Below, piece after piece: positions 19,178 through 56,857 of a stretch of DNA of 64,000 nucleotides; position 1 is the first letter of the stretch, and each line of letters starts with the position of its first letter. Below the pieces are notes generated by a model. It was not told the origin of the DNA, ran no database searches, and was given only the letters and a program-made list of their open reading frames with translations. Source of the DNA: Haliotis rufescens (Eukaryota); the NCBI RefSeq assembly GCF_023055435.1, contig NW_025963813.1, positions 38,440,001 through 38,504,000 on the forward strand. The letters are read 5' to 3'. Position numbers and translations under genes: made by a program.

Positions 19178-22100
19178 TCACTTGCAGATATCAACATCCG
19201 CATCAGGAAACACAGCAAACCCGAAGGTCCTTGCTGGCAGCATGAGGAGCCCGCCATAGGCCTTTTGAGGGGGCATGTCGGGGATGGTGTTGTTCACATA
19301 ATCCAGTCGTTTACCATTTAGTGTCACATTCCTGAAATTACAATGTCAGTGTCATATATCAAACGGTATATCTGTGCCAATAAGACGCCAACCACTTCCC
19401 AAACGACGACAACACATCAGCTATTCGGATTACAATGGTTAATAAAATGTACGTGACATTATAGGTCACGTCTATCTATGTAGTGCGTAATGTAAAGGCA
19501 AGGACAAAGCGTTATTGTTAGGTGTTATTATTATTATTATTTTCATCTCTATGGCATGAAATATTAGCAAACCCGACTGACGTTAGCCTTTGTTACAAAG
19601 TGTTTAAAGTGTTCTGAATAGTTTCTTTGTGACATCACGTATCCGTATACTTGCCTTGAAGTAAGGTCTATGAACTCTGGTCTGAGCCAGAAGAGATCCA
19701 TATTCTTTTGGAATTGTGGGAAGGTGGCGACGGTGGTGTAGATGTTGACGTTGACGATGTAGACTACAACACTACCCGGCTTGTAGTTGTACACGCTGTG
19801 AAAAAATATGTGGAACATTGTTGGACAAAAAATGGTTAATATAGTTAAGCACTTCCGAATTCGATGTCATTAAATTACAAGCACCTCATGAAAATGTGTG
19901 ACGGCAGTGCAGATATGTTAAATGTTCTTTATGTTGATGATTGAATTTAAAGAGGAAGTGACTGAAACATAAATATTTGTCTCCTGCATACTGACTACCC
20001 CATCAGCACATCCCAAGGAGGAGATATTTTGTTCTAGAAGTTGATGTTCAAATATAAAAAGGACACTGACTATCCCACTCAACACCTTCCAACTGTGTAC
20101 CTGTTCTGTTTGGCACAGTGGGCGTAGACCCTGAAACTGTTGCTTGAGTTGGTCTGCACAGATAACACTTTATTCCCAACCAGTCTCTTGTAGAGCAAAG
20201 TCAGCCAGTAGTCCTGGAAAGTGACAATTGTCACACAAAGAACATACTCAGATTTATCACATGAAAGGGTCATGAGCGGGTGACAGGGTAGCAGGTTTAC
20301 CAACAGTTATCAAATACTGGACACATTGACACATAAATTGGCTACGTAAAAATAGATAGAAAGTTTCACGATATCCAATGATGTCTCTACAGTTCAAGTC
20401 AGAGACATTAGGTAAACTGACAAAGTATTTCTTAATGTATTACCGAAAGAAACTCCTTTTGCAACGAGTTTTAGATAATCCTAATGGAACAAGAATATAT
20501 GATATTTGTACCTACCGGATAAGGTTCAAACGTGTGCGGTTCGATCAGAGAATAATTTTGTCCATAGTACGATTGTCTCAAAACCCCTTTAAGTCCCATC
20601 CTTGAAGCAACCCCGAGCTTGTCTAACCATCTGAAATATTCATATCATTAATAGTCCAGGTAAGTGTAAATCAAAACATTTATGTTTTATGTTCAAAGCG
20701 AGTTGAACAAATGAAATGGAGGAGACGATTTTGCGTTCATTAGACTATCCATGTCGTCGTGCACATTCCCCAATTGCGTGGATCGATGCTCATGATATCA
20801 GTCACTGCACTGTCAGGTCCAGACTCGATTATTTACAGAAAGCCGTCATATGACTGGAATATTGCTGAGAGCGGCGTTCAGCTTACTCCTGCTTCAACAT
20901 CATTAACAAGACAAGAATGTATACCAACTGTTTACTCAGTGTTTTATGTGTGTCTGTGTATTCTGCAATGTCCAGGCCCATATGGTCTATACCCAGAGGG
21001 AAGCTGGTACTAAATATAACCTCAGCAGCATGAGTTTGGTTTGGTTGTTTGTTGTTCAAGACCGCACACAGCAATATTCCAGCTATATGACGGCGGTCTG
21101 TAAATAATCGAGTCTGGACCAGACAATCCAGTGATTGACATTAGCATCAATCCACGCAATTGGAATACAATGCGCATGAGGATCAGATGGTTACCATTCA
21201 GGAACTGACTGATTGCCTAGAATACCTTCTTTACAATCCGCACCCCTATAGTTTCTAACTGTCTCGAAAGCGAACATCCATGCACTATAAACTGGCCAAT
21301 TGATAAACCATTCGGTCGTCACTCTGTAGACCCAGGTTCGAATCCTCACATTGGAAACTTATATGAAGACCATTTCTGGTGTCCCCTGCCGTGATATTGA
21401 TGGAATAGTGCTTAAAGCTCACTCAGTCATTCGCGCACTCCAAATTTGTTTCGCCATGGAAATAATGCAGACAGACAATACTCACAGAAAGCCTGCAACA
21501 TATCTATCAGATATATCAGGTGCTCCCCCGCCATAGAAGGACGATGTCTCCCCAAGCCAAACGGGAGTGTCGGGGTTGGTAGGAGCGGTGACATTACGCA
21601 CTCTATGGATGTCAGATATCAGGCTGTCCAGCACCTTGGGGTCGAGACAGGTGTCCACTGTAACACCGACTTCGTAGGCATAGTATCTAAACATTCAAAC
21701 ATTTCAAATTCAACGCAAAGAAAAGTTCGTTTTTAAGTGTCCCTACTGCAATGGTTGACAAACGTAGTGCCGTTACATGTGTGGTTACAAAAACCTAATT
21801 AGATAAATAAGTAAGAAACTGATATAGCTTAAAACTCACTGGTGAAAGGTGATTCTGTCGACAGCTTTGCTTCCTTCACCTTTGAAGAAACTGTGAAATA
21901 GTCAATAGGAATCCCAGCATTAAACTCGTTTCAAAATCCGTTTACGGTATAGAACATGGAATATGTGACTGAATATGATGTACTGGAGTGGTGCATGGGT
22001 CATCTATATATCGTTTATCACATTGCTGTAATATAGCAGTTGGGTACCATGAGGCCTCACATTTTAATTTAATTTAACAACCCCCATGATGATGCTCTAA

Positions 22101-25100
22101 CCCAGATAACATTTTGAACTTCTGTTTTGCACGTTTCTGCTTACTTCTCGAACAATATGGATCTCGGTCCTGAGATACCTGTTACATCTGGTCCAATCAC
22201 CAGCGTGGATTCGAACCCAGGAGTAGACTTGAGGATTTCCCTAAGATGGACAAAATCTCGCCCAAGCTGTGCTCCAGAAATTGTATTGGTGAAGGGTTCA
22301 GGGAAATATTCAGGTTCTAGAGACCAAAGAAACTAGAGTATTATATCAAGAATATGATTATGGTCGTTACAGTACATATGTTCGTCATGCTCTACACCTT
22401 TTGACTTTGAGATTGAAGAATAACGTGCACATATCTTAAAGTAGTAAACAGAATGACCTAGGTATAACTAATTATACATACTTGGTGAAGTATAATATCA
22501 TACACAAAGAGGTTACGTTGTATGTTCTATTCAATGAGCTGAAGAACTGTTACCATTTCCGAGTTCAAATGCGGGCATCTTGTAGTTCCTGGCATAGCTA
22601 TAGCTCATCAGTTCTTTGGCGTTTTCAGGGTCCCACTGTCCGTCTTTCCGCTTCAATACATTAAGGCCAAACACCAAGTCCCATCCCACGGCCCTCACAA
22701 AGTCATTCAGATTGTCCCATATGGCACCTCAATGATAAAATAGATTGTTTATGGGTACATTTCTCAGCTGGATGAGGCCAATAAATTAACTCGGATAAAC
22801 AAGCAACATAATGTAACGTACACGTAGGTACTCAGTGTTTGCGAACAAACATGGCGTCGCTCTTCTTAATCGTCGATCGAGTCAGAATTAATATTAAGAA
22901 GTCATCCTTTGTTCAGTTCAATATAAATGTTCTCGAAAGACAGATTGAACGTCTTAGTTTAAGTTAGATACCACCACCAAACCAACGTCCGGCTATGCCT
23001 CTCTCCGAAGATATTGTTCACGTGCAGAAACGCTTTTTGAAGCATGTCGCTGTCGAAGCCGAATATCAGTTTCAGAAAACAAATGTCTTCGCTGCCAGTT
23101 TAAAACGACTGATCACTGACATTGCGACATAATATTTTAATGCGAACATTCCAAGATAAGTTTCGATAATAGATTCATGAATAACATTATAAGACAAAGT
23201 GGCTATCGTGGTTGTGTGTGCTTGGATGTTAAAAACTATGTACTTTTTAAGTACAGTGTTCATTCCTCATAGAACATATTTACCATCCCAAAACACACAC
23301 GTGTGATAACCCCTATATGTCCTTCTTTTGAAAACAATAAAATATTCATTTAAACAAATGTAAATGAGATCATTGATCGATATGGAGTACAATTTTGAAC
23401 ATTGGCCTATTGTAATCAGTGTAAACTGATTTTTGGACCAGGGATAGCAAAAAATTACCACAAGATACTAGCTTCCGCCCAAAATCCGTAGGGCCAATGA
23501 CGAAGGGCAGATAACAAGTAGGTTTTGATGATATATGTCGCCCTAATGTCTGCAATTGCTGGTCCGATTACTTACACTCTTTGAATGGTAAGTCCCCATG
23601 GTCCCAAGTAAGGTGGCCTTACTTTGGTTACTGGTGATCTATAGCCCAATTTAAAGCCCGATTGAAAGTGTATTCTCTTAACTGTTCTCAACTAGTTGTA
23701 AATTAAAAAAATGTGATACTCTAGTTATCTTATCGTCCATCGTTGACAGCTTTTTTAATCTAAATATAATTATTATAACTGTTTCGTTACGATATGGCTA
23801 AAATATTGCCGATGTGACGTTAAATTTCACTCACTCACTCACTCACTCACTCACTCACTCACTCACTCTGAATGTGTTTGCTGCTTTAGGTGCTTGACAT
23901 TTTTTGTTCTTTGTCTTTGGTCATCTGTCACGTGGTTTAGTCGCCATTATGGATTCATGGTTTCACAGTGTGGATTGGTGCATGTCTTTACATCCATACT
24001 CTCTGAATCAACTGCATAAAATGCTTCCAAACTCTCTGAGAGTTCTCTCAATACATGCCACATTAAATATGTATTGCCGGTTTTGGATATCTTTTTAGTT
24101 GCGGATATATTGGATTTTGATTTTGATAATTTATTTCTCATAAATTTTACTTTAAATATCATATCTGTTTTGTTCTTGTTTGCATGGTAAAAGTAGTACT
24201 GCTTGGCAGTTATGTTTGATTCAAGTTAGTACTCTAATTGAGTACTACTAATAATAAGCGCCCCACAATTATTGATTAACCCCCGTTCACTGTCTAATTA
24301 GAGAGCCAAGAGCAATACACAATCTTGTCACAAATGTCGTCAGTTTTATGTATATTACCCGTGAAGAATAGAGTTAGAACTGGTTTTCAGCAAACCCATG
24401 CTTGTCTTGTCGTAAGAAGTGACTAACGGAATCGGGTGGTCAGGCTTGTTGCATTTGTTGATGCATGTATTCGTTTTCCAATAGGCAATTGCTTCGGTGC
24501 CTTACGTTGGATAGCATTGGTACAAGCAAACCCTTCGAGGATTTTAACATGGAGGAACACTCTTTAGAACACCCTTGGACACACTGGCACACGCCAATTT
24601 CATAGCGGCGGTTCCTGGGGTTCTACGCCGTGCGCCACACAAGCCGAGTCGGCGAGCGCCCGTGTCAACCCAAACCGAGGCGGAGAGCCCTTGCTTAGCG
24701 GGGTTCGGGATCCCGTCTTTGGCTATGTTTGAGCGTCCGCAGGAACGGCAGTAAACTCAATTCCTTTCTTCATTCAGGCAGTTACTGAAGCTCATTCGCT
24801 CAGCGATAGTGGTATTGAAACTGTCGTTTTGTGTCGTCCACGCCCACACCATTGTGTAAGCACCGCTTCTCGTCCACTGAGTTGCCCGATTATGTTCAAA
24901 TGTTGTTTGCGTATGTAGACAGTTGCGTTCCAGATACCACCAACATTCCAAGGCCGTGCTTTTGTGTCTAAGGAGCCCGACATTGCTGCTTACAGCTATA
25001 TTTTACCTTATACTTACTCACGGAATCAATGTCAGGGGTTTGCATATGATCTTACTACAGCAGTTAAAGCAGGATTCAGTACAGATTACATTCCTAATCA

Positions 25101-26446
25101 TTGAATGTGACAATTTTTGAGACCTCTGCTCTACATTAACTGCATATTTCACAGACTCTGGATGGCGTCAGGATTATTATAAGCAGTGTAAATCCCTAAC
25201 AACTCAAAACGTTGTCACGGCGAAGGAACCTTATCACTTGATGAATGTTATGACCCAATTGATATCATTCATTTTTCTGGCATTGAATACTCCCAAAACG
25301 AAGTGTCGTATATATTATATAAGTCACATAAACATACCAGTAAAAGTGGAGTTTGCACTTGTACCCCCATGACCCGTTGGGTCAAATGTATTGAAGTCTC
25401 CAGCTGTTCCGCCTATTCTCAGATAGCTGGGGGATAACGCCTTAGCAAGCGTCCGCACTTTGGGTGAACTAGAAAATTAATTTCAAATATTATATCATCA
25501 AAATGATTTGTTCTTTTTCAAACGTGAACGATTGTTCACCATATTCGTATGATATATAATGTTTTATCATAAACTTAAGTGTGAAAGACTGAGTTTGATA
25601 TTTTCATTGCAGTGAACATGGCAATTGATATTTCACTGCACTGAACATAACACTTGATATTTCTCTGTTGCCATTTATGGAGTTAATATCGCTTCAGGCC
25701 GTATGTTATTCTCTTAGAGATTGTTTCGTTATATACTGTAAATTTCTCACTTAACTCGTCAATCGAGACTGGTCGTTTCGCAAAGCGCAATTTTGTTTCT
25801 TGACCAGCGTGTATTCTTTCGCTTCAAACAGCGGTTTGGTAGTTTTCAAGTATATTTTTTTTGTTAAAGTTGATTTTGTATATAACCATATCTATATGTA
25901 TGATAGAGACGTTTCGTGCCCCTAAAAATGTCTTGCTTCTCTTCTTCATATTTTTTAAAGATTATGCAAACACGAAACTACTTCTCCAGTTGCAAATACA
26001 GGGGGTGGTGAACCATCCCTGTGTGTTAGGTAGGGAGAATTTACGTTTCAAGTTTTTACATTTGTAATGAAATATTTACCGGTAGACAACTACACAAAAA
26101 GTATATAAAAAAAAAATATTTCTTATGTCTCGTAAAATATTATGTTTCTCTCATCGCGTGACGGGGAAAAATGAGATATATCCTTTTCACCCGTGATATT
26201 TCACTCGACACATGAAATATCCTCTCTACAGTAAACTACATAAATAAACTAATACACTCACCGTAAATCCAGTCCTCCCCAGTTAAAAGCTATTGGTATC
26301 TCTGCTGAATCAATTGTCACTCCAACGAAATGGTCATCTATCGTTGCTATTTCCTTGTCTGTAGCAACAGTGACAGAAACAGACTGACCCACTGTACATT
26401 GCACATGTAAGGAGCAGAGTATAACGAGCACACGTGTCACAGTCAT
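19178..26446 (-). CDS. HPSE: Heparanase-like GH79 gene C, complete, 10 exons, 478 aa
   Basis: Exons 26262-26446, 25338-25468, 22554-22727, 22145-22316, 21840-21890, 21486-21686, 20516-20630, 20101-20213, 19655-19795, 19178-19331 total 1437 nt, open frame. GNEPE and WLGETSS intact. Intron 9 has a GC donor. Confidence 0.92.
23828..23867. repeat. (CACT)n microsatellite (SINE-tail type)
   Basis: Perfect run preceded by a gacgttaaa tail motif. Confidence 0.85.
25553..26228. mobile_element. Unclassified insertion of about 670 bp in gene C intron 1
   Basis: Intron 1 is 793 nt in C but 123-148 nt in D/E/F, with alignable flanks; internal repeated gatatttcactg motifs. Boundaries approximate. Confidence 0.5.
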
Positions 26447-26600
26447 GGTGTCCTCAGCACTGCATGTATGTTAATGTGTATCTATATAAAGAAGTATACC
26501 ATTTAATGTGAACGACTGACCTCGTGTCAACGACAAACTGCTGATAAACTGATAAAACAACTGGTTTACTTGAGTTCGATGATGGAATTTTTTAAACCAG
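26447..26600 (-). promoter_or_regulatory. Conserved proximal promoter of the C-F subfamily (TATA-like box, AGGTCA half-site, tandem GATA sites)
   Basis: TTTATATAGA about 40 nt upstream of the ATG, then TGACCT and ctGATAAactGATAAaa. Related blocks lie upstream of D (34696-34820), E, F and the 57.3 kb relic. Confidence 0.55.
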
Positions 26601-29625: not shown

Positions 29626-32600
29626 TCACTTGCAGATATCAACATCCGCATCAGGGAACACGGCAAACCCGAAGGTCCTCGCTGGCAGCATGAGGAGCCC
29701 GCCATAGGCCTTTTGAGGGGGCATGTCGGGGATGGTGTTGTTCACATAATCCAGTCGTTTACCATTTAGAGTCACATTCCTGAAATTACAATGTCAACTG
29801 AAATTAAGGACAACACTAGCGACGATAAACCATAGTCTCGTTAGTTATATGAGTGATCACGTTTGAGTATGTAGCACATTATATAAAGTAAAACGCACGT
29901 AATATTAGCCTGTATCATAAAGTGTTCTCGTTCCGCTGTGTATTAGTCTCTGACCATCATCATGTATCCCTTTACTTGCCTTGATGTAAGTTCTATGAAC
30001 TCTGGTCTGAGCCAGAAGAGATCCATATTCTTTTGGAATTGTGGGAAGGTGACGACGGTGGTGTAGATGTTGACGTTGACGATGTAGATTACGACACTGC
30101 CCGGCTTGTAGTTGTATACACTATTCAAAGATATGGAAACAGGTTGGAGCGAAAAGTTACAATATTTTGGCACATCAGAAGTCATCACATTACATGCACG
30201 TTATGGAAATGGATGACAACAGAGGAGACATTTATGTTCTAGAAGTTAATGTTCAAATATAAAAAGGACACTGACTATCCCACTCAACACCTTCCAACTG
30301 TGTACCTGTTCTGTTTGGCACAATGGGCATAGACCCTGAAACTGTTGGTTGAGTTGGTCTGCACAGATAACACTTTATTCCCAACCAGTCGCTTGTAGAG
30401 CAAGGTCAGCCAGTAGTCCTGGAAAGTGACAATTGTCTATGCATCACGTAGGTCTGAATCGTATCGGAAGAAAATATGTGGCGCAGAAAAGTTTCTGAAA
30501 ATACAGGACTTTCACGCTTCATGCATGACACTGGTGCTACTGTCTTGTATTGTATATATGTGCAGGTAATATGAGTTTGTGTGAATACGTTTGATTAATT
30601 ATGTATATTATGTAACTTCTGGTGGAAAATAAAGATTTTAGCCAGTCCCGACGGAACAAGATGCCATGATATTTGTACCTACCGAATAAGGTTCAAATGT
30701 GTTCATCTCGATCAGAGAATAATTGTGTCCATAGTATGATTGTCTTAAAACCCCTTTAAGTCCCATCCGTGAGGCAACCCCGAGCTTGTCTAACCATCTG
30801 AAATATTAATTTGAAGCTAGGTGAATCAAATGCGGGATGAATAATTGCTCACATGCTTGTCGAGGTAGGGTTGCGCATTCATTCTGGCACTATCCACAAC
30901 AATAAAAGTCCTCAAACGGGCACGGGCGGCCTAGTCGTCAAGGGCGCCGCGATTCGATGTGCAGAGTTGCGTCCCTTGGGCACGCTAAAAACCTATGATT
31001 GTGGGTTCGAATCCCGGTTCGCCCCGATTATGTTTCTAGGTTTGTCAGCACCATACCCGTGCTCGTGGGTTAATCTGAAGTGGTAAACGTCTAAGACCTG
31101 CATCACATCGGGCTTTCCTCCCATACTAAGCTGACACTCCGTGATATAACTGGAATACTGTTAAAAGCGGCATTAAACCCAATTCACTTACACCCACCAG
31201 ATTAAACAAGGCTGTATATAATTTTTTTCAGCTGACAGATGTTGGCCGAAGTTTTATGTGTGTTTGTTGTTTCTGTTTGGTCCAGGTCCATATCGTCAAC
31301 TAACCGGTTACTACAAATATCCTCAGCAGTATGAGCGTGAGTAGGTCTCCATGCAGGATCTGGCTGATTGTGTGTCACCATGCACCGACTGGTCTTGCTG
31401 TCAAACTCTGGTTTGCCAGACCCAGTATTGTGTATTTACAAAACGCACCGCTAAAGCTTGACTATTTCTAACTACCTCGTAAAAGAACACCAATGCACTA
31501 TAAACAGGGGTAACTATAAACCGTTTGGTCGTCACGCTGTTGACCCAGGTTCCATTCCTCATACTGGTAGGTTCCCTGAAGCTAGTTTCTGGTATATTCT
31601 ACTGATGAAATAGGTGTAAGTACATACTCGCTCTATAAATTGTTATACTTTATAAAAATAAAGTAACTTTCAAAAAGAGAGACAATACTCACAGAAACCC
31701 CGCTACATATCTATCAGATAACGCTGGAGTTCCCCCACCGTAGAAGGACGATGTCTCCCCAAGCCAAAGGGGAGTGTCGGGGTTGGAGGGGGTGGTGACA
31801 TTACGCACTCTGTGGATGTCAGATATCAGGCTGTCCATCACCTTGGAGTCGAGGCAGGTGTTCACTGTTGCATCGCCTTCAAAGGCATAGTACCTAAACA
31901 TTTAAAGCATTTTCAAATGTGACGCTAAGGAAAACTCGTTTATTAAGTGTCCCTACTGCAATATTAATAAGCGTAGAGTAGTAACATGTGTAGTTACAAT
32001 AACTTAATTCAACACATGTTTCAGAAGATGACATAGCTTAAGACTCACTGGTGAAAGGTGATTCTGTCAACGGCCTTTCTTCCTTCGCCTTCGAAGAAAC
32101 TGAAAAATCATCAATAGGAATTCTAGCATCAAACTCATAATTGTGAATACCGTTTTCGGTAATTGAATGGTGTGAGCTACTGGATTAGTGTCATGGATAC
32201 TTTACAATGATTTATATATCGCTTATCATATCACCGCATTAAAACAGTTGAGAAGATTGACCATGTCCATGAAGTATCATTTGTTACTTTCACATCAGTA
32301 TCATGCTACTGGTACCCAGATGACAATGTGTGCCAATCATGAAAACATGTGTTCTAAGTTTCCACTTACTTCTGAAACAATATGGATTTCGGTCCTGAGA
32401 TACCTGTTACATCTGGTCCAATCACCAGCGTGGATTCGAACCCAGGAGTAGACTTGAGGATTTCCCTAAGATGGACAAAATCTCGCCCAAGCTGTGCTCC
32501 AGAAATTGTATTGGTGAAGGGTTCAGGGAAATATTCAGGTTCTAGAGACCAAAGAAACTAGAGTATTATATCAAGAATATGATTATGGTCGTTACAGTAC

Positions 32601-44700: not shown

Positions 44701-47700
44701 ATGTTCACATCATTACAATGTACATGTTGGTGTAAAATTAATACAGTCACGTTTTGTTTTCGATTGAGCAGTATACCTCTCTAAAGGTGATGTTTTACAC
44801 TCCAATATGCAGCATTCCAGATATATCACTGAGGCCTTTAAATAACCAACTACCGAGACCATAATAATGCTATGATCAACGAACGATGTCGAGGTACAAC
44901 TGCATATATTAGTAGCGGCTCTGGTGACACACGAAAGTTGTTGAAGCTTTAATCTGATTTTTTACACATGCAACTTACAAAGTTCAAAACTAATTTCGGT
45001 TGAGAGAACTTCGAGTAATTGTTTCAGTTATTCTCTTCAAAGGGTTTTCTGAGAACATTAAACGTACCGTTTGGTAACAAAGTTTATAAATATGAAAAGT
45101 CAACGTCAGATAATTACGCAATGGGGATTATACAATTATTTGAAACAAATTATGAATTAATTGCATGTCAAAGCATACGAGTGCAAATCACAACACATGT
45201 CCAAAAAAGTTGCAACAAAATTCATATGAGGATGAGGGCTAATACACAAAATTAGATCACAGTTATAACCGTAGTTGGTTATAAAACATATATACAGCAT
45301 ATAAACAGCAAATGGCCTGGCCCCAAAATCTGTTCGTTAAATCCGCCAGTTCGTTATAAACGTAGTTTACTGTACATGAATTCCATGTGTACGTAACATT
45401 TGTTCACCAGACATTGTTGTGAGTTATAAGAAACGAAATGCTAACCTATAGTAGACATTCTTGACAAATACTCACAGAAAGCCGGCCACATATCTATCCG
45501 ACAGTCCAGGCGCTCCGCCTCCAGAGAAAGAAGACGTCTCCCCGAGCCACAAGGGAGTGTCGGGGTTGGCGGGGGTGGTGACGTTGCGTACTATGTCAAT
45601 GAAACTTATGAGACTGTCCATCACTTTGGGGTCGATAAAGGTGTCCACTTTAGCATTGCCTTCGAAGCCGTAGTAGCTAGACATTCAATAATTCCAAATT
45701 AGGTGAGAGTAGGTGAACTGTGATTTAACGTCACATACAAGGATAACGTGGGCAGCATGATAGAACCGAGGATCAAACCACAGAATTTCTGCTCTCTGGG
45801 CAGGCACTCCATCTACTAGACCACGGATGTAACCTGGCACAAATTATTAAATATCTCCTTTACAAAGCATCTCAATGTTCATTACTGATTAATAGTATCT
45901 GTTGTCAAATGAAACTTAATTGAATATATAAATAAGAAAATTATAATAGCTTACTCACTGGTGGAAAGTTATCCTGTCAAGCGCTTTTCGTCCGTCCCCT
46001 TTAAAGAAACTGTAAGGGAATACATGTGAATCTAACAATACGACTCTTCTATTTATACTGGTTCATCCATACCGAGAACATCGGGCATAAGGAAGTATCT
46101 GCATACATGGTGTCAGTTTTACTGTAAAATCAGTATACCATATTGCTGTAATCAGTAATTATTTATCACAATAATGCTGCTTTCATCTGTTGTCATAAAG
46201 GCCCTTATACCAATTGCGCTGATTACGAGAAGATATGTTTTGTATTTTTCTACTTACGTTTTAAACAATATCGATTTTGGCCCTGAGATAGCTGTTACGT
46301 CTGGTCCAATCACCAGGGTGGATTCAAAGCCAGGTGTAGACTTGACTATTTCCCTAAGATGGACAAAATCTCGCCCAAGCTGTGCTCCAGATATTGTATC
46401 GGTGAATGGTTCGGGAAAATATGCAGGTTCTAGAGAACAACCAAGTAGAGTACTGAATCAAGGAAATGACTCATGAATTCGAAACACATGAATTCATAAA
46501 GCACCCATAGCTGACTTTGAGTCAAGCACGATATGTTTTAGTAACACACGCAGATGAAGAAGCCAGGAAAAAAGTATATCGTCTACAAGAATGCTTGGCT
46601 GTATAATTATGACCTATATAACTATACACTACCATTTCCGAGTTCAAAGGCCGGTATCGTGTAGTTCCTGGCATTGCTATAGCTCATCAGTTCTTTGGCG
46701 TTTTCAGGGTCCCACTGTCCGTCTTTCCGCTTCAACACGTTGAGACCAAACACCAATTCCCACCCCACGATCCTCAAAAAGTCATTGAGATTGTCCCACA
46801 TAGCACCTCAAAGATAAAAAGAAGAAGCATGTACTTCCATCGAAAGCAATATTTATTCATGCAAATAGTAAACAGTTATTTTGATTGATTGATTGATTCG
46901 TGTCGCTGTGTATAAGGATTTTAAATTACAAAACGTTTTTAAACAGGAGCTTGCGTATGATGATTTCACAGCAGATAAAGTCAAGATTTTAAACATATTA
47001 CGTTGTGAATCATTGAATGGGAATTTTACCACCAGGCTTCACGGAATTGTAATTGCAACGGACTTTGTAAGTCCTTGTCAGCTCAAACCGTTTGACTTTT
47101 TTAACCAGTTGAACATTATTCAGTTATGATTGTCATGGTATTGAGTACAGCTCCCCCCTCNNNNNNNNNNNNNNNNNNNNNNNNNNNNNNNNNNNNNNNN
47201 NNNNNNNNNNNNNNNNNNNNNNNNNNNNNNNNNNNNNNNNNNNNNNNNNNNNNNNNNNNNNNNNNNNNNNNNNNNNNNNNNNNNNNNNNNNNNNNACATA
47301 TATAAGTCATATAAACATACCAGTATAAGTGGAGTTTGCACTTGTACCCCCATGACCCGTTGGGTCAAAGGTCATGAAGTCTCCAGGTGTTCCTCCTATC
47401 CTCAGGTAGCACGGATACAATGCTTTAGCAAGTGTTTGCACTTTATGCGATCTAGTTTTAAGATAAAGTATATTCATCAGAAACTGGAAATAGTTGCGTT
47501 GCTATTTAAAACTTCAAATAATTTGCACCATATTCATGTATTATACTGTTACCTGAAGCAAATACAATCTATTTATCATTATTTGAATAGTACACTCACG
47601 CGAAATCAAGTCCTTTCCAATCAATTGATATTGGAAGCATGGATGAATCAAAGGTCACTCCAACGAAATGGTCATCTATCGATCCTATTTCCTTGTCTGT

Positions 47701-47784
47701 AGCAACAGTGACAGATACAGACTGACTCAGTGTAAATTGCACAAACCAGGAACACAGAATAACGAGCAAACGTCTCACATACAT
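41795..47784 (-). CDS. HPSE: Heparanase-like GH79 gene E, complete, with duplicated exon 8 (8a/8b)
   Basis: Exons 47600-47784, 47321-47451, 46633-46806, 46258-46429, 45959-46009, 45476-45676, 44581-44695, 8a 43202-43314 or 8b 42989-43101, 42322-42462, 41795-41948. GNEPA and WLGETSS. N-gap in intron 2. Confidence 0.9.
47161..47295. other. Assembly gap
   Basis: Run of N in gene E intron 2. Confidence 1.
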
Positions 47785-50386: not shown

Positions 50387-51272
50387 TAACTTCTTTAAGA
50401 AACGTGTTAAAAAACGCAAATCCAATGCATTGAGAATGTTCCATCAGTTTCGAGGAGGTCGAAAATGTCTAGATCATCAGGGTGACTCACCTGTTTGAAT
50501 CAGGAGAGAGGTGACACAAAGGATCGATGGTGTTCAAAATGATATTCTTGTATTAACCATACCTTTTATCAGGCTTTTGCTAAAACCAGATTAGCATTTT
50601 GTGTTAAATAAGTCCATCGTTTTAAGATCAGTATCTGACTCTATACGAGCATTTATCATGCACGCTTGGAGCAGCCCTCTTCATCATATTTGGAATCATA
50701 TAATCCCGAACCTGAAAGTGTAAGCAAGGGTAGATCTGTCACTAACACGCCTGGACCACCCACGCGATCATTCGACCTACGTCTTTAACAGACTGTTATT
50801 ATTTCATTGATAAAGTATCTGTTGTTATTGTAGCTTGATACTTAACCGGATACAGCTGCGATGTGTATTGTTATCTCATGTTAATGTGATGGTACCAGAG
50901 TGTTATATTAAGGGTTTGAATTATTCTCTTTCTTGTCATTGTGTGAGGCCCATTTCTGGTGTCCCCCGCCGCGATATTGCTGGAATATTGTTAAGAGCGG
51001 CGTAAAACCATACTCACTCACTCACTCTTTTCAACCTTCATCTTGGGTTGAACCTCATTTGGAAACTAATCAACTACTAAATACTTTTGACATATACGGG
51101 CATTCTGTCAATAAGAACAACTAAACAATGTTTGATAATTTCGATGCCCTCAGCCTATTATATACAGGAACGTTACACGACTAGGTATAGCATTCTAACA
51201 AGATAGGAAAGCAAATATTTGCAATGTAATATTAGTTTAATGTCGTACACATTACAATAAATACCGTCAGCA

Positions 51273-54200
51273 TCATTTGCAGATATCAACATCCGCATCA
51301 GGGAACACGGCAAACCCGAAGGTCCTTGCTGGTAGCATGAGGAGCCCGCCATAGGCCTTTTGAGGGGGCATGTCGGGGATGGTGTTGTTCACATAATCCA
51401 GTCGTTTACCATTTAGTGTCACATTCCTGAAATTACAACGTTAGTGTCTTAGATTCAATGCTTCCCTTGTACCAATAAGACTAAAGCGCCGATAACACAT
51501 CAGTCAGTTTGATGTTCGATAGAAATGTATGTGACATTACAGGTCACGTTTTAGTAGGTAGCACGTTATATTACGGCAAAGTCGTTGCATATATATATTA
51601 GCCTTTGTCATAAAGTATTAGTGTTCTGCTGCGCATTAGTCTCTACAGCATATGAATGATCATGTATCCCATACGTGCCTTGAAGTAAGGTCTATGAACT
51701 CTGGTCTGAGCCAGAAGAGATCCATATTCTTTTGGAATTGTGGGAAGGTGACGACGGTGGTGTAGATGTTGACGTTGATGATGTAGACTACAACACTTCC
51801 CGGCTTGTAGTTGTATACGCTATGTAAACATATGGGAAATTGTGAGACACAAGGATTAACATAGACACATCAGACCTCATTAAATTCCAGTACGTCACGG
51901 AAATGTGTGACCATAAAGCAGATATTTATGTTCTAGAAGTTGACGTTTAAAATATAAAAAGGAAGTAAGTAAAAATAAGAATGCTTGATAACGGTATTAG
52001 AACCTATGCCAAAACGTCGCTCTTCAATGTAATAAAGAAGTTGTTCATCCATAAATTCTTATCCTTACTAAGTACTACAACTTCTAAATGCCATTCAAAG
52101 AAGTAAAAATGAAGTGCTTAAACAGTATGTACTCGTCTCTGACTGTTCAATGTAACACATTCCAACTGTGTACCTGTTCTGTTTGGCACAGTGGGCGTAG
52201 ACCCTGAAACTGTTGCTTGAGTTGGTCTGCACAGATAACACGTTATTCCCAACAAGTCTCTTGTAGAGCAAAGTCAGCCAGTAGTCCTGGAATGTAGCAT
52301 TTGTCATACACAGGACATACATGTACATATACACACACATTTGATATAGATAAGAATGATTATGAACGAACATGTCTTGTATCAAATAAAAGCAACAAAA
52401 CCGTATTCATAAGAAATCTCTTCTAAAAGCAGAGTCGATTGCATGGTTCAAATTATATCCAATGTATCACTCACATGTATGCGCTTAAAGAGTAGGGATA
52501 TGACTCATATTGAAACTTTCACGAGTTCTTCACAGTTCGAATCAGAGACAGATACAGAATAAAAGAAACAGAAAAGATGAATTTTAGATCAAAAGATAAG
52601 ATTTTATTTGAACTTACCGGATAAGGTTCAAACGAGTTCATCTCGATGAGAGAATAATTTTTTCCATAGTATGATTGCCTCAAAACACCCTTAAGTCCCA
52701 TCCGTGAAGCAATCCCGAGCTTGTCTAACCATCTGAAATATCATGTCATTGAGATAGGCGTAGATCAAGGTAAGTCCATATACTGTAACAGGGTGGCGTT
52801 CATTTTACGTTCAGTAGACGACCCATGGCTTCGAGGTACGGTTTCACATTCATTCATTCCAGCAGGTTATACAACATATATGGTCATGTAGCCAGAGGCA
52901 TTATCCCTGCGACCTACACACTCCCAGACCAGCTTACACAAGACGAGACAATATAACTTCTCAACAGCTGACAAATGTCATCAGTATTTTTATGTTTATT
53001 TGCTGCTTCTGCTCCAGTTCCAGTATGGTCGTGAGATGCATGTGCCAAGTACATTCCTCTGTGGGATATGCTCGGCATAAGAACCCGATATGAATAAGGA
53101 TCAGGTGGTTACCATGCAGGGTCTGGCTGATTGTGTGGCATCATACCCTGATTGTCCATGAAGTCAAGACCCGTGAAGATCCGGGGTAGAATAGGTCTCC
53201 AACAACACATGCTTGCCGTAAAAGCCGACTGTGCTTGTCGTAAGAGGCGAATAACGGGATCGGGTGGTGAGGCTCGCTGACTTGGTTGATGCTGTCATCG
53301 ATCCCAAAAGCGCGGATCGATGCTCATGATATTAATCACTGGATTGTCAGGTCCAGACTCGATTATTTACAGACCACCGTCATATGGAATAGTGCTGAGT
53401 TCGGCGTTAAACAACCAACCTGCCAACCAACCCTGTTGTAAAGCTCTGGTTGGCCTGACTAGTTTATGTACAGTCCGCCTCACTATGCCTGGACTATATC
53501 TAACTGTCTCATAACAAAACATTCATCTATAACAAACGAGGCGATGGGGTAGACTCGTGGATAAAGCTCGCTGTAGACCCAGGTCTGATTCCACACATGG
53601 GTAAATTGCGTGTAGCCCCCAACACCACCCCCCCCCCCCCCCCCCCCAAACCACCCCTCCCCAAATCCCCCCCTCCCCCGTTATATGGGATAATGCTAAG
53701 AGAAGCGTAAAACCATACACAGTCACTCACTCATGCACGATACTCGTTATAAGTTAAAGAAAATAAAGTCAACCTTGAAAAGACAGGCAATACTCACAAG
53801 AACCCTGCGACATATCTGTCAGATACACCAGGAGTTCCCCCGCCATAGAATGTCGATGTCTCCCCAAGCCAAAGGGGCGTGTCGGGGTTGGAGGGGGTGG
53901 TGACGTTACGCACGGTTTCTATGTCAGATATCAGACTGTCCATCACCTTGGGGTCTGTACAGGCGTCCGGTGTACCAAAAGATTTGTAGGCGTAGTACCT
54001 GCACAGTAAATTGATTTCTGACCACAAAGTGTCTCCACTATACTGATTAAGAAACAGTCATATAAAAAAGTGAACTTAAAAGTAAGTAATTGAATAAACA
54101 TTATTGGATAGAGAATGATTCCAGTTCAAGACTCACTGGTGGAATGTTATCCTATCAACTGCTTTGCTTCCTTCCCCTTTGAAGAAACTGTAAAACAGTA

Positions 54201-56857
54201 AAAATAAATCCAAGAATCAGAGCCGTTTTATAATTGTTTTATACATTGGGTATTGTCAGTGACTCTTATTTTAGGAAATGAGATAGTGTCAGAGACACTT
54301 CAAAATATTGAAAATATCTGATTTAACATATTGCTGTAACAAAGCAATTGGGAACATTTATCTATGCTTATGAGGCATAATTGACAGTGATTCATAAACA
54401 CATGGTCATGATATAGTCGGAATCGTACACTCGAATCTGCTTTAGCGGAAATTTCTTATGAATTTTGAAGGGTTTTGTTGCATTTATTTACATTCAAATA
54501 ACAACGCTCTTGTTGCTGTTACCAATCTTGACATTTCTGTCACGTTCACTTCCACTTACTCTCGGAACACCAATGATTTCTTCCCTTTGATACCTGTAAC
54601 GTCTGGTCCAATCACCAAGGTGGATTCGAACCCAGTAGTAGACTTGAGTATTTCCCTAAGATGGGCAAAATCTCTCCCAAGCTGTGCTCCAGATATTGTA
54701 TCGGTGAAGGGTTCGGGAAAATATGAAGGTTCTAGAGACCAAACGAAGTAGAGTACAAAATTACGAATGTCATTTTTTCCCCATTGAACTACACAGTTTG
54801 AAATTTTCAACGTACAATTTAAGATTTGCAATGTACTCTTATGGCACGGGGATTAAACAAGGTATATTGTCACTTGGAGAAATAGAATGTGAAATAGATA
54901 GATGTTACGCTGTTCACTACCATTTCCGAGTTCAAATGCGGGTATCTTGTAGTTTCTGGCATTGCTATAGGTCATCAGTTCTTTGGCGTTGTCAGGGTCC
55001 CACTGTCCGTCTTTCCGCTTCAGCACGTTGAGGCCAAACACCAAGTCCCAACCCACAGTCTCCAGAAAGTTATTAAGTTTGTCCCATTCAGCACCTCAAA
55101 AATAATCAACCAAATGTACCATACAATACGTCCGTTCGTGGCATGATGAAGCCAAGGGATAGCTATGCCCGGATAAATATGCGAAGAGAAGAATTGCACG
55201 GCTACTTTCGGTGTTTACAAAAAAAACATGGCATCGCCCAATATATAAATTACAGTCCCAGAGAAGTCAAATCATTATGTAGGACAGTTGGAAAGACATC
55301 GCTTAACGTACGTACCACCACCAAGACCACGTAAGAACAGACTGCTAACGTGTTTGTAATCATTATCAAAATAATAGTCCACCAGTCTCTGAAAACATGT
55401 TAACTGCCAGTTGGCACCATCCGACAAACTAATCACTGGCTAAATGATGTAATATCGTATCAATGCACACATTCCAGGAACACTTGTTTTGGAACAGAGA
55501 TGAGAATACGCATTACGATGATAAATGTATGATGACATTATATGACGAACAGGTTAACACACTTGTGTGTACTAAGATATTACAAACTATGTACTTAGCT
55601 CGCCATCCCGTGATGATCCAGGTTAGGTCTTCAACCCATGCTTGCCATAAAAGGCGACTGTGCCTGTCTTAGAGGCAAATAAAGGGACCGGGTGGTCAGG
55701 CTCGCTGGCTTAGTGCATGTCATCTTACCCTGATGGCGTAGATTGATGCTCATGATGTCAGTCACTTGAATGTCTGGTTCAGACTCGATAATAATCGATT
55801 ATTAACAGAGTATATATAGCTGGAATATTGCCTTGTGCGGTTTTTAAACATAAATCAAACAAAGCACGCAAACGTTTGCTCAATACAATGTATATTCCCG
55901 AGACAAATATTACCTATCCCAGAACCCACTTGCGCGAAATTTATATCTATTTATCTTTCTAGTGTATTCATATGAGGAAATGCATTGCAGAATTAATGGC
56001 TGACATGTACATGTATGGGTTTGAACTTTGCAGTTGTCTGTACCTTATTGAAAGTGCCTGTGTTATTGTAACCACATTACTCCAACTTTCACAGGCGCTC
56101 TATTCCTTCAGGGAAAATAACACACTGTTTAAATGAAGGCAATAGGTTCGCTTTGAAATATTAAACGTCTTGAACCAATTCAACATTATTCAGTTATGAT
56201 TCTCGTGGTATTGAATACTTTCAAACCAGGAGTCACGTGTATGTCATGTAAACATACTAAGCTTTTCAATCAATTCTGTCATCGCAATTACCCCTGCCAG
56301 CTCAACCGTTATGAAATAATGACAGCTATGAACCAGTTCAACAATATTTAGTTTTGACTATCGTGGCATTGAATAAACTTCGATCATCACTGCCCAGAAT
56401 CATACCAGTATAAGTGGAGTCTGGACTTGTACCCCCATGACCCGTTGGGTCAAAGGTCATGAAGTCTCCAGGTGTTCCGCCTATCCTCAGGTAGCACGGA
56501 GACAATGCTTTCGCAAGCGTCTTCACTTTAGGTGAACTAGAAAAACAAGTCTTACAATAACAGGTATTCTCACAAACAAAAAAGAGTTGTTTTAGTTGAA
56601 ATTTAAAAGATTATTAATCATATTTATGTAAAATAGTGTTAAATGAAACTCATAAGGAAATGATACACTCACCCGAAATCGAGCCCCATCCAATTAATAG
56701 ATATTGGTAGCATTTGGGAATCAAATGTCACTCCAATGAAATGGTCATCTATCGTTGCTATTTCCTTGTCTGTAGCAACAGTAACAGAAACAGACTGACA
56801 CACTGTACATTGCACATGTAAGGAGCAGAGTATAACGAGCACACGTGTCACAGTCAT
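51273..56857 (-). CDS. HPSE: Heparanase-like GH79 gene F, complete, 10 exons, 478 aa
   Basis: Exons 56673-56857, 56406-56536, 54921-55094, 54560-54731, 54137-54187, 53798-53998, 52618-52732, 52174-52286, 51679-51819, 51273-51426. GNEPS and WLGETST; GC donor at intron 9. Confidence 0.92.

What the first reader, a model, noticed from the sequence alone, without database searches (positions are those of the whole stretch)
19178..56857. Divergence among paralogs is concentrated in substrate-cleft loops; heparin-binding basic patches are missing
Seen: exon 10 is almost invariant in C-F while cleft loops vary. After the acid/base Glu: EPN/EPD/EPE/EPE/EPA/EPS (A-F). Exon 1 loop in C-F: DSAEIP/DSSMLA/DSSMLP/DSQMLP. 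After H[QH]YY: AYEVGVT/AFEGDAT/GFEGNAK/AYKSFGT. After the nucleophile: SSCYHGG (B), SSFSGGG (E), STFYGGG (F). Exon 7: YYGQNY/YYGHNY/FYGQNY/YYGKNY. Known: the equivalent human regions (Asp62, Glu225, Glu343, Tyr348-Gly350, Tyr391) line the active site, and the basic KKFKN and PRRK patches bind sulfates. Here these patches are replaced by mostly neutral residues. Inference: specificity has diversified toward non-heparan or less sulfated substrates.
Basis: partly seen in the sequence, partly recalled or inferred. Interest (0 to 1): 0.75.

Follow-up and report, generated by a model that had tools for sequence, protein, structure and literature searches.

The report
Abalone heparanase-like paralogs diverge at cleft rim
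Four neighbouring red-abalone genes encode intact heparanase-like enzymes that keep the catalytic pocket but differ in a few loops at the rim of the sugar-binding groove and lack most of the positive charges human heparanase uses to hold sulfated sugars, so they probably cut other glucuronic-acid polymers.

Summary
C-F (window 19178-56857, minus strand) are four intact 10-exon, 478-aa GH79 genes, identical or nearly so to RefSeq 'heparanase-like' proteins of Haliotis rufescens. All nine introns of F are confirmed by spliced contigs. The N gap lies in intron 2 of E, so no exon is missing.

- **Exon 10:** its near-invariance is mainly concerted evolution, not special constraint. The C-terminal domain differs 2-7% among red-abalone paralogs but 15-17% between orthologs of two abalone species.
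- **Where divergence sits:** within the barrel, divergence falls in a few cleft-rim elements, above all the loop at human Arg303 (12 consecutive variable residues). It is not spread over all cleft loops.
- **Statistics:** a-priori tests of enrichment are weak (p 0.04-0.14), and dN/dS never clearly exceeds 1.
- **Constraint within types:** the hot loops are conserved within each paralog type (pN/pS 0.16). This points to old specialisation rather than drift.
- **Basic residues:** of 12 that line the human channel, B-E keep 1 and F keeps 3. F has a basic patch at the second heparin-binding site. The species also has a canonical-like heparanase that keeps the patches.

Substrates remain untested. 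Other first-reader notes on this window describe the same array.

The parts
19178..26446 (-). Gene C, 10 exons: 26262-26446, 25338-25468, 22554-22727, 22145-22316, 21840-21890, 21486-21686, 20516-20630, 20101-20213, 19655-19795, 19178-19331
   Evidence: Exon borders from paralog homology, splice sites and phases. All 10 exon translations are contained in RefSeq protein P0275.
29626..34695 (-). Gene D, 10 exons: 34511-34695, 34257-34387, 32810-32983, 32370-32541, 32049-32099, 31693-31893, 30683-30797, 30306-30418, 29980-30120, 29626-29779
   Evidence: Nine of 10 exons are in P0264. That RefSeq model carries C's exon 9 and so is a D-to-C read-through model.
41795..47784 (-). Gene E, 10 exons: 47600-47784, 47321-47451, 46633-46806, 46258-46429, 45959-46009, 45476-45676, 44581-44695, exon 8 in two tandem copies (8a 43202-43314, 8b 42989-43101), 42322-42462, 41795-41948
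   Evidence: P0154 (RefSeq isoform X1) uses exon 8b. The 386-aa isoforms P0268 and P0270 contain 8a.
47161..47295 (.). Assembly gap (N), inside intron 2 of gene E, 25 bases downstream of the exon 2 donor
   Evidence: No exon is missing, and the frame is set by the splice sites, not by the gap length.
51273..56857 (-). Gene F, 10 exons: 56673-56857, 56406-56536, 54921-55094, 54560-54731, 54137-54187, 53798-53998, 52618-52732, 52174-52286, 51679-51819, 51273-51426
   Evidence: All 10 exons are in P0271. Eight of the nine introns appear as joints of spliced contigs and the exon 7/8 junction in a contig piece (X1 record 2), from runs X1, X2, X3 and X5, including the GC-AG intron 9.
53956..53991 (-). 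Hot spot: loop beta6-alpha6 (residues 241-252, at human 300-311, holding the Arg303 position), gene F. Same loop in C 21644-21679, D 31851-31886, E 45634-45669.
   Evidence: All 12 positions vary among C-F and 0 of 100,000 shuffles reach that run. pN/pS is 1.15 between types. The loop is conserved between orthologs: 11 E-F differences against 4 ortholog differences.
56675..56722 (-). Loop beta1-alpha1 after the Asp62 equivalent (residues 46-61), gene F. In C 26264-26311, D 34513-34560, E 47602-47649.
   Evidence: 10 of 17 positions vary over residues 47-63. Q48 stands at human Asn64. This loop also changes between orthologs: 4 paralog against 9 ortholog differences.
54562..54594 (-). HBD2 equivalent (residues 210-220, at human 270-280), gene F. 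In C 22147-22179, D 32372-32404, E 46260-46292.
   Evidence: F has [11 protein letters not shown] (4 basic), [36 protein letters not shown].
56419..56433 (-). HBD1 equivalent (residues 97-101, at human KKFKN 158-162), gene F. In C 25351-25365, D 34270-34284, E 47334-47348. Only 4 residues stand where human residues 107-157, which include the linker, lie.
   Evidence: alignment. GTSPD in F and GTSAN in C-E.
53839..53862 (-). Nucleophile Glu and the Tyr348-Gly350 equivalent (residues 284-291), gene F. In C 21527-21550, D 31734-31757, E 45517-45540.
   Evidence: E has Ser at the Tyr348 position, conserved in its H. asinina and H. cracherodii orthologs.
51273..52286 (-). Exons 8-10 of F (C-terminal beta-sandwich domain): the homogenised part. 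Same exons in C 19178-20213, D 29626-30418, E 41795-43314.
   Evidence: 93-98% DNA identity among C-F beside introns at 50-81%. Paralogs differ 2.2-7.4% in protein but orthologs 14.8-17.0%.

Best explanation
C, D, E and F are four intact tandem genes for secreted, single-chain GH79 endo-beta-glucuronidase-like enzymes. F is shown to be transcribed. They belong to a large Haliotis expansion.

**Shown**
- They have the heparanase fold, both catalytic glutamates and the full set of residues that hold glucuronic acid in the -1 subsite.
- They lack the activation linker and 9-11 of the 12 basic residues that line the human heparan-sulfate channel.
- The differences among the four types are not spread evenly. 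They pile up in a few elements at the two ends of the groove: loop beta1-alpha1 (human Asn64), the beta5-alpha5 turn and first half of helix 5 (human HBD2), loop beta6-alpha6 (human Arg303) and helix 2 (the end of HBD1).
- The strong sameness of exons 8-10 comes from gene conversion among the paralogs in the red/black abalone lineage.
- Within each type, the hot loops are as constrained as the rest of the protein.

**Inferred**
- After the older duplications, each type fixed its own flanking-subsite architecture and has kept it. The enzymes therefore share the cleaved sugar (beta-glucuronic acid) but differ in the neighbouring sugars or charges they accept.
- Their substrates are less sulfated than heparan sulfate, or not heparan sulfate at all.
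- F and its H. asinina ortholog are the most basic type.
For: **Gene models and expression**
- Models come and match RefSeq proteins P0275, P0154 and P0271 exon for exon.
- Spliced contigs confirm the nine F introns: eight as joints, exon 7/8 in a contig piece.

**Family membership**
- Pfam PF03662 hits exon 3 at E 8.4e-12.
- The AlphaFold model has pLDDT 93 and pTM 0.92.
- The best structural matches are proheparanase 5la4_A (TM 0.90) and leech hyaluronidase 7eyo_A (TM 0.88).

**Residue mapping**
- The mapping comes from the alignment.
- The contact homologs of Asp62, Thr97, Asn224, Glu225, Glu343, Gly350 and Tyr391 are invariant in B-F. The homologs of Asn64, Lys159, Gln270, Arg272, Arg303 and Ala388/Gly389 are not.
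- The human contact lists come from passages of PMC6892829 and PMC4847616.
- Basic channel residues kept: 1 of 12 in B-E, 3 of 12 in F.

**Hot spots**
- Per-element counts are, the shuffle test and regional pN/pS.
- In the three hot elements pN/pS is 0.26-0.84, against 0.14-0.24 in the rest of the barrel. The N:S ratio differs at p<0.01 in 4 of 6 pairs.

**Type-specific conservation**
- The E loop GFEGNAKV[DE]TFI and the F loop AYK[SA]FGTP[DE][AI]CT are kept between H. rufescens and H. asinina.
- The paralog:ortholog difference ratio is 22:17 in hot elements against 35:63 elsewhere, p 0.035.
- Within type (window gene against its three segmental copies, exons 3-7, partly 8), hot codons give Nd 6.0/747 and Sd 11/225 (ratio 0.16). 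Other codons give Nd 39/5948 and Sd 80/1744 (ratio 0.14). Intron mismatch is 5.1%.

**Concerted evolution**
- Fisher tests of paralog against ortholog differences, N-part against C-part, give p 0.00013 (F) and 0.0027 (E).

**Ancestral state**
- A canonical-like heparanase of the same species (P0175) keeps KKHYKN, a basic HBD2 and the Arg at 303.
Against: - No biochemical datum exists for any of these proteins.
- A-priori enrichment tests are weak: beta-alpha loops against other surface elements p 0.14; contacts +-3 p 0.10; paralog:ortholog ratio for all beta-alpha loops p 0.16.
- The 'three hot elements' were chosen after seeing the data.
- pN/pS never clearly exceeds 1.
- Loop beta1-alpha1 changes as much between orthologs (9) as between paralogs (4). 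It may simply be a fast loop.
- Recent differences between segmental copies are scattered over the protein.
- AU tests on the C-terminal part reject neither orthology nor concerted topology (p 0.46 and 0.34). The conversion claim therefore rests on distances.
- The 12 within-type comparisons are not independent.
- I had no coordinates of the model. 'Cleft rim' rests on homology to human residues and on secondary-structure topology, not on measured distances.
- Only F was checked for transcription.
Confidence: 0.6

Rival explanations
1. The pattern is a by-product with no change of specificity. Gene conversion keeps homogenising the parts of the genes that are similar enough. Tolerant surface loops drift and, once diverged, escape conversion. 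The paralogs are then redundant copies kept for dosage.
For: - Conversion is evident in exons 8-10 and in exon 4 of C and D, which are 98% identical.
- pN/pS is at most about 1 everywhere.
- Beta-alpha loops are not significantly more variable than helices plus alpha-beta loops, p 0.14.
- Loop beta1-alpha1 is fast between orthologs too.
- The whole array is present four times on the contig, which looks like dosage amplification.
Against: - The hot loops are under purifying selection within each type: ratio 0.16, the same as the rest of the protein.
- The beta6-alpha6 loop is kept between species that differ by 12-14% overall.
- Several variable positions are direct homologs of human substrate contacts: Asn64, Asn227, Arg272, Arg303, Tyr348 and Ala388/Gly389.
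Confidence: 0.25
2. The paralogs are still heparan-sulfate heparanases. Sulfate recognition has moved to other residues, and the variation tunes them to differently sulfated heparan sulfate domains of the animal's own matrix rather than to foreign polymers.
For: - The closest solved relatives by sequence and fold are human heparanase entries.
- F has a basic HBD2 equivalent plus Lys at 243 and 329.
- All copies keep a Lys or Arg at position 215 and Lys at the Lys79 position.
Against: - 9-11 of the 12 basic channel residues are gone, and the Lys231 position is Glu.
- The mature proteins are net acidic.
- The same species keeps a canonical-like heparanase with the patches.
- Seven other molluscs surveyed have 1-4 GH79 genes (table passage of PMC7560691), against 68 exon-6 matches here.
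Confidence: 0.12
3. Some or all copies are non-catalytic binding proteins (as HPSE2 is in vertebrates) or exo-acting beta-glucuronidases, rather than endo-enzymes.
For: - One segmental copy of E carries Ser at the Asn224 position, and one chimeric RefSeq protein has Trp next to the nucleophile.
- GH79 includes exo-glucuronidases such as the Acidobacterium enzyme.
Against: - The window copies C-F keep both glutamates, Asn224, Tyr391 and the Gly-Gly turn.
- The segment that closes the groove into a pocket in proheparanase and in the Acidobacterium enzyme (passage of PMC9500389) is reduced to 4 residues. This predicts an open groove.
Confidence: 0.08

Closest known systems
Human heparanase HPSE (GH79, EC 3.2.1.166; PDB 5E8M, proenzyme 5LA4)
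   Same: - (beta/alpha)8 barrel plus beta-sandwich fold: TM 0.90 to 5la4_A, rmsd 1.6-1.9 A to the 50 kDa chain, 35-40% identity.
- Both catalytic Glu, Asn224, Asp62, Thr97, Gly349-Gly350 and Tyr391 are conserved.
- The intron falls in the Glu225 codon.
   Different: - No 48-residue linker: 4 residues stand where human residues 107-157 lie. The protein is therefore single-chain, with no cathepsin-type activation.
- HBD1 lysines, Lys231/232 and Arg303 are absent. HBD2 is neutral in C-E.
- Gly389 is deleted.
- The mature protein is net acidic.
Leech hyaluronoglucuronidase (GH79, PDB 7EYO)
   Same: - A lophotrochozoan GH79 enzyme that acts on an unsulfated glucuronic-acid polymer.
- Second-best structural match, TM 0.88 and rmsd 2.7 A.
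- Sequence E 5.2e-67.
   Different: - Lower sequence similarity than to human heparanase: 229 against 304 bits.
- I did not compare its specificity-determining residues.
- No activity data exist for the abalone proteins.
Canonical-like molluscan heparanases (H. rufescens P0175, H. rubra P0186, Gigantopelta P0179, Patella P0018/P0201)
   Same: Same family and the same species or class, 42-44% identical to the H. asinina member of the C-F clade used as query (P0001).
   Different: These keep a 24-26-residue insert at the linker site. P0175 and P0186 also keep a KKxxKN motif at HBD1; the others do not. All keep 3-4 basic residues in HBD2 and Arg or Lys at the 303 position. The array genes have lost all of these.
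Burkholderia pseudomallei heparanase and Acidobacterium capsulatum beta-glucuronidase (bacterial GH79)
   Same: Single-chain GH79 with a conserved -1 subsite and divergent -2/+1 subsites. A passage of PMC9500389 gives this as the structural reason for different specificities within GH79.
   Different: Only 18-20% identity. The Acidobacterium enzyme has a loop that closes the groove (exo-acting), and the abalone proteins lack it.

Membership tests
Glycoside hydrolase family 79 (clan GH-A) | (beta/alpha)8 barrel with an appended beta-sandwich domain | tested here: met
   AlphaFold model of F has pLDDT 93. Foldseek gives E 2.5e-55 to 5la4_A, followed by other GH79 entries.
Glycoside hydrolase family 79 (clan GH-A) | Sequence match to the family profile (Pfam PF03662) | tested here: met
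   Exon 3 scores 45.2 bits against a cut-off of 23.1. PF03662 is precomputed for the full proteins. Exon 6 alone scores 17.8 bits, below the cut-off.
Glycoside hydrolase family 79 (clan GH-A) | Acid/base Glu in an Asn-Glu-Pro motif after strand 4, and nucleophile Glu after strand 7 | tested here: met
   N163-E164-P165 and E284 in all of B-F align to human Asn224-Glu225-Pro226 and Glu343.
Glycoside hydrolase family 79 (clan GH-A) | Glucuronic-acid (-1) subsite: Asp62, Thr97, Gly349-Gly350 and Tyr391 equivalents | tested here: met
   Invariant in C-F. B has His at the Gly349 position.
Heparanase proper (EC 3.2.1.166, heparan-sulfate endo-beta-glucuronidase) | Proenzyme with an excised linker, giving an 8 kDa + 50 kDa heterodimer | tested here: not met
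   Four residues (T93-G96) stand where human residues 107-157 lie.
Heparanase proper (EC 3.2.1.166, heparan-sulfate endo-beta-glucuronidase) | Basic heparin-binding domain 1 (Lys158-Asp171) | tested here: not met
   GTSAN or GTSPD stand at KKFKN. There is no Lys or Arg at the 158, 159 or 161 positions in B-F.
Heparanase proper (EC 3.2.1.166, heparan-sulfate endo-beta-glucuronidase) | Basic heparin-binding domain 2 (Gln270-Lys280) and Arg303 | tested here: not met
   C, D, E and B have 1-2 basic residues of 11 in this domain. F has 4 of 11, so the feature is partly met in F only. The Arg303 position is V, G, G and S in C-F (A in the D2 copy) and E in B.
Heparanase proper (EC 3.2.1.166, heparan-sulfate endo-beta-glucuronidase) | Cleaves heparan sulfate | not testable with these tools
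   No assay was possible, and no paper on these proteins was found.
Hyaluronoglucuronidase (leech type, EC 3.2.1.36) | Cleaves hyaluronan at beta-1,3 glucuronidic bonds | not testable with these tools
   There is only fold and sequence likeness to 7eyo_A.

The most novel reading that the evidence does not exclude
The array is part of an abalone (grazing-gastropod) radiation of single-chain, acidic GH79 endo-beta-glucuronidases. These have left heparan sulfate and serve as digestive enzymes for glucuronic-acid-containing algal polysaccharides such as ulvan, glucuronans or the glucuronomannan cores of brown-algal fucoidans. Each paralog type would be tuned by its beta6-alpha6 and HBD2-site loops to different neighbouring sugars. 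Gene conversion would keep the non-catalytic domain uniform. This would be a new substrate class for animal GH79.
Probability: 0.2. Interest if true: 0.75.

Novelty: new variant of a known kind. Interest (0 to 1): 0.5.

Why it matters
Heparanase is treated as a single-copy matrix-remodelling enzyme with one substrate. Here one chromosome of an alga-grazing mollusc carries dozens of heparanase-like genes. They keep the catalytic pocket but have shed the linker and the sulfate-binding charges, and they differ at the flanking subsites.

If the types differ in substrate, three things follow:
- They give a natural series for learning which loops set specificity in GH79.
- They are a possible source of new endo-glucuronidases for algal polymers.
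- They are a clear case of divergence at functional loops being maintained against gene conversion in a tandem family.

The work also warns that site-model dN/dS on the full-length genes would be misled by conversion in exons 8-10.

Tried and rejected
- **PDB search with exon 1 alone** found nothing. The Asp62 mapping comes from the full-length record P0271.
- **Pfam on single exons** gave family hits for only 2 of 9 exons. There was one chance-level Thioredoxin_7 hit on exon 1, E 0.074.
- **Automatic border picking** chose wrong GC or AG sites at 14 borders. I corrected them from the codon displays, and one more (B exon 8). The corrected borders were then borne out by RefSeq proteins and by spliced contigs for F.
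- **AU tests** on the C-terminal part were inconclusive.
- **A first version of the within-type comparison** used the wrong strand and gave nonsense with stop codons. It is discarded, and one search replaces it.
- **Synonymous constraint in exon 10:** I considered this as the cause of its low pS. I think it less likely than conversion, for two reasons. In exons 3-7 within-type pS (4.6-4.9%) equals intron mismatch (5.1%). And the same domain differs 15-17% between species. I did not test exon 10 itself in this way.
- **The four arrays as an assembly artefact:** I considered this. They are 91-97% identical including introns, so they are diverged copies.
- **Measuring distances on the model** was not possible, because no coordinates are given out.
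- **Literature:** six searches found no paper on abalone GH79 or heparanase-like genes. The library lacks most subscription journals. The 2015 structure paper was not held, so I used passages of PMC9500389, PMC6892829 and PMC4847616 instead. Supplementary files were not consulted. The supplements of PMC7560691 might list GH79 copies per species.
- **Joined spliced models:** the step of searching with one was left out. Searches went exon by exon or used database records.

Full report
**What is there**

The window holds a tandem array of heparanase-like genes. By paralog homology, splice sites and intron phases I defined ten exons for each of B (plus strand) and C, D, E and F (minus strand). I also defined the first four exons of A.
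- C-F each sum to 1437 bases (478 codons plus stop) with no internal stop.
- Exon lengths are the same in all four: 185, 131, 174, 172, 51, 201, 115, 113, 141 and 154 bases.
- The finding's coordinates, 19178-56857, run exactly from the stop of C to the start codon of F.
- The catalytic acid/base Glu codon is split by intron 3 (G|AA).
- Intron 9 of C-F has a GC donor (AG|GCAAGT), while B has GT.

These models are not new. The exon translations are contained, exon for exon, in RefSeq proteins named 'heparanase-like [Haliotis rufescens]':

| Gene | RefSeq record | Exons matched | Note |
|---|---|---|---|
| B | P0279 | 10 of 10 | |
| C | P0275 | 10 of 10 | |
| F | P0271 | 10 of 10 | |
| E | P0154 | 9 of 10 | uses the second copy of a duplicated exon 8 |
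| D | P0264 | 9 of 10 | carries C's exon 9, a read-through model |

**The gap**

The N run 47161-47295 lies in intron 2 of E, 25 bases after the exon 2 donor. Nothing coding is missing: all ten E exons have the family's lengths and the RefSeq protein spans the junction.

**Transcription**

Contigs of four coded runs that hold about a quarter of the words of the F gene (its exon share) were laid on window 51200-56900.
- They contain joints at 51426|51679, 51819|52174, 52732|53798, 53998|54137, 54187|54560, 54731|54921, 55094|56406 and 56536|56673.
- One contig piece bridges exons 8 and 7.
- Together these account for all nine modelled introns of F, including the GC-AG one and the donor that creates the Glu codon.
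- At a 95% likeness threshold these contigs may come from F or from its near copies elsewhere.
- C, D and E were not checked this way.

**Family**

- Pfam PF03662 (GH79 N-terminal domain) matches exon 3 at E 8.4e-12 and, below its cut-off, exon 6. The other seven exons tested give no family hit.
- F aligns to human proheparanase 5la4_A at E 1.2e-89 and to leech hyaluronoglucuronidase 7eyo_A at 5.2e-67.
- An AlphaFold model of F, built from 77 named sequences, has pLDDT 93 and pTM 0.92.
- Its best structural matches are 5la4_A (TM 0.90), 7eyo_A (TM 0.88) and the human 50 kDa chains (rmsd 1.6-1.9 A).

All 15 motifs searched are present, once each, on the stated genes. The EPx series and H[QH]YY are confirmed. 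The alignment (human residue = chain index + 34) gives this mapping:

| Abalone F residue(s) | Human residue(s) |
|---|---|
| D46 | Asp62 |
| Q48 | Asn64 |
| T83 | Thr97 |
| G97-T98-S99-P100-D101 | KKFKN 158-162 |
| N163-E164 | Asn224-Glu225 |
| S166 | Asn227 |
| E170-P171 | Lys231-Lys232 |
| G210 to R220 | Gln270 to Lys280 |
| S244 | Arg303 |
| E284 | Glu343 |
| Y289-G290-G291 | Tyr348-Gly350 |
| K329 | Ala388 (Gly389 is deleted) |
| Y331 | Tyr391 |

Only four residues (T93-G96) stand where human residues 107-157 lie, so the linker is absent.

**Basic patches**

PMC4847616 (passage read) lists twelve basic residues around the human channel: Arg70, Lys79, Lys98, Lys158, Lys159, Lys161, Lys231, Lys232, Arg272, Arg273, Lys274 and Arg303.
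- At the homologous positions B, C, D-type and E keep one (Lys79).
- F keeps three (Lys79, and Lys at 272 and 274).
- F's H. asinina ortholog also keeps three.

The Lys at 212 is peculiar to the window's copy, since the three other F copies have Thr.

The mature proteins are net acidic: -4 to -8 for C-F and -12 for B.

Loss of the patches is not special to C-F. In alignment A1, many Haliotis members show the same short nine-residue segment at the linker/HBD1 site. A canonical-like heparanase of the same species (P0175, 495 aa) keeps KKHYKN, KVDKKNVRLYFE and Gly-Arg at 302-303, as do relatives in other gastropods. MAFFT columns in the linker region are unreliable, so I judged this from the raw segments.

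**Why exon 10 is invariant**

Exon 10 is 96-97% identical in DNA in all six pairs, and exons 8 and 9 are 86-98% identical. The introns between and beside them are 50-81% identical. Mean pS is 0.17 in the C-terminal domain against 0.33 in the barrel.

Protein distances settle the cause:

| Comparison | Residues 21-343 | Residues 344-478 |
|---|---|---|
| Orthologs (F to H. asinina P0157; E to P0151) | 14.0%, 12.3% | 14.8%, 17.0% |
| Red-abalone paralogs | 15-19% | 2.2-7.4% |
| H. asinina paralogs (4 pairs measured) | 18.8-28.3% | 11-27% |

- The C-terminal domain is therefore not unusually constrained. It has been homogenised among the paralogs in the red/black abalone lineage.
- Fisher tests of paralog against ortholog differences across the two parts give p 0.00013 for F and 0.0027 for E.
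- AU tests on the short C-terminal alignment reject neither topology (p 0.46, 0.34).
- In the barrel part, F groups with P0157 (98/98 support), and C, D and E each group with their H. cracherodii orthologs.
- Exon 4 of C and D is 98% identical, another converted tract.
- Any site-model test must therefore leave out exons 8-10.

**Is divergence concentrated in cleft loops?**

Among C-F, 109 of 478 positions vary. The count is 110 with D's own exon 9. Using the model's secondary structure, I classed residues before counting:

| Structural class | Variable / total |
|---|---|
| Beta-alpha loops (catalytic face) | 41/122 |
| Helices | 30/114 |
| Alpha-beta loops | 8/36 |
| Strands | 7/47 |
| C-domain | 14/139 |
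| Signal peptide | 9/20 |

- Beta-alpha loops against the rest of the barrel give OR 1.71, p 0.039. Against helices plus alpha-beta loops the result is p 0.14.
- Positions within three residues of the fourteen human contact homologs give 25/70 against 65/253, p 0.10. The contact list is from a passage of PMC6892829.

The heterogeneity is among loops:

| Element | Variable / total |
|---|---|
| Loop 1 (47-63) | 10/17 |
| Loop 6 (239-253) | 12/15 |
| Helix 5 (213-230, HBD2) | 9/18 |
| Helix 2 (106-119, end of HBD1) | 7/14 |
| Loop 3 (128-139) | 0/12 |
| Loop 4 (162-177) | 2/16 |

The run of 12 variable residues at 241-252 is reached in 0 of 100,000 shuffles. The -1 subsite homologs never vary. 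The homologs of Asn64, Asn227, Arg272, Arg303, Tyr348 (Ser in E) and Ala388 do. This is the pattern that PMC9500389 (passage) describes across GH79: a conserved -1 subsite and poorly conserved -2 and +1 subsites.

**Selection**

- Overall pairwise omega is 0.15-0.28.
- Regional pN/pS, averaged over six pairs: 1.15 in 241-253 (Nd 9.7, Sd 2.5), 1.22 in 97-110 (few changes), 1.09 in the signal peptide, about 0.5 in the Asp62 loop and the HBD2 equivalent, and 0.04-0.36 elsewhere.
- In the three hot elements the N:S ratio differs from the rest of the barrel at p<0.01 in 4 of 6 pairs. For all beta-alpha loops it differs at p<0.05 in 2 of 6 pairs.
- Nothing shows omega clearly above 1.

Two results argue against plain drift.
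- **The loops are type-specific across species.** E has GFEGNAKV[DE]TFI and Ser at the Tyr348 position in H. rufescens, H. cracherodii and H. asinina. F has AYK[SA]FGTP[DE][AI]CT in H. rufescens and H. asinina. In loop 6, E and F differ at 11 positions while the two ortholog pairs together differ at 4. The three hot elements give 22:17 against 35:63 for the rest of the barrel, p 0.035. All beta-alpha loops give p 0.16. Loop 1 goes the other way, 4:9.
- **The array exists four times on the same contig.** The other three copies are 91-97% identical to the window including introns. I compared each window gene with its three copies over exons 3-7 (partly exon 8). These twelve comparisons are not independent. 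Intron mismatch is 5.1%. Hot codons give pS 0.049 and pN 0.008 (ratio 0.16). Other codons give pS 0.046 and pN 0.007 (ratio 0.14).

The hot loops are therefore as constrained as the rest within a type. The divergence is old and has been maintained. It is not ongoing diversification, and recent amino-acid differences between copies are scattered.

**Context**

- Exon 6 of F finds 68 matches in the genome, all on one contig, at 25.26-25.76 Mb and 38.18-40.41 Mb.
- A survey of seven other molluscs lists 1-4 GH79 genes each (table passage of PMC7560691).
- Many H. asinina, Patella and Littorina proteins appear among the 120 best hits.
- I found no paper on this family in abalone.

**Verdict**

The generalisation and the interpretation are partly right. 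The best reading is a set of single-chain GH79 endo-glucuronidase-like enzymes that share the glucuronic-acid pocket, have lost most sulfate-binding charge, and differ by type at a few cleft-end elements that are now conserved. Gene conversion explains the uniform C-terminal exons. What they cleave is unknown.

Noticed in passing
window 42989-43314 (-): Exon 8 of gene E is duplicated in tandem (8a 43202-43314, 8b 42989-43101). Both copies have intact splice sites and both are 113 bases, so including both would shift the frame. RefSeq isoform X1 (P0154) uses 8b. The 386-aa isoforms contain 8a.
   Followed up: partly
window 15674-15861 (+): In gene B the last 56 bases of exon 9 plus the donor site are repeated three times (63-base unit, 99% match). 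This gives three candidate donors in a row.
   Followed up: partly
window 19647-19654, 29972-29979, 42314-42321, 51671-51678 (-): Intron 9 of C, D, E and F has a GC donor (AG|GCAAGT type), while B has GT. For F the GC-AG junction is used in spliced contigs of four runs.
   Followed up: yes
G000 contig C35, about 38.46-38.49, 39.25-39.29, 39.65-39.69 and 40.33-40.36 Mb: The C-F array occurs four times on the same contig. The copies are 91-97% identical to the window including introns. Altogether exon 6 has 68 matches on this contig.
   Followed up: partly
window 29626-34695 and 19178-26446 (-): RefSeq protein P0264 ('isoform X2') joins exons 1-8 of D to exons 9-10 of the downstream gene C. This is either a read-through transcript or a chimeric model.
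   Followed up: partly
L016 (G000:C35:40351518-40354715) and protein P0267: One segmental copy of E has Ser at the Asn224 position next to the acid/base Glu. Another RefSeq protein (P0155) and locus L008 have Trp in place of the Gly just before the nucleophile Glu. These copies are possibly inactive.
   Followed up: no
window 14109-14234 (+), 17480-17659 (-), 38060-38257 (-), 8451-8705 (-), 61032-61247 (+), 62461-62607 (+): Isolated exon-like fragments lie between or inside the genes. They resemble exon 6, 2, 3, 1, 3 and 7 respectively. They are remnants of further copies, or the start of a seventh gene on the plus strand near the window's end.
   Followed up: no
protein P0173 (gene A type; window 1318-6820): The A-type protein is unusually rich in histidine (28 His) and is net positive, unlike B-F.
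   Followed up: no
window 53110-53491, 55593-55783, 51964-52154, 54256-54446: Intronic stretches of F have very high contig depth and many joints to each other in the RNA-like runs. They are most likely transcribed repeats or transposon pieces.
   Followed up: no
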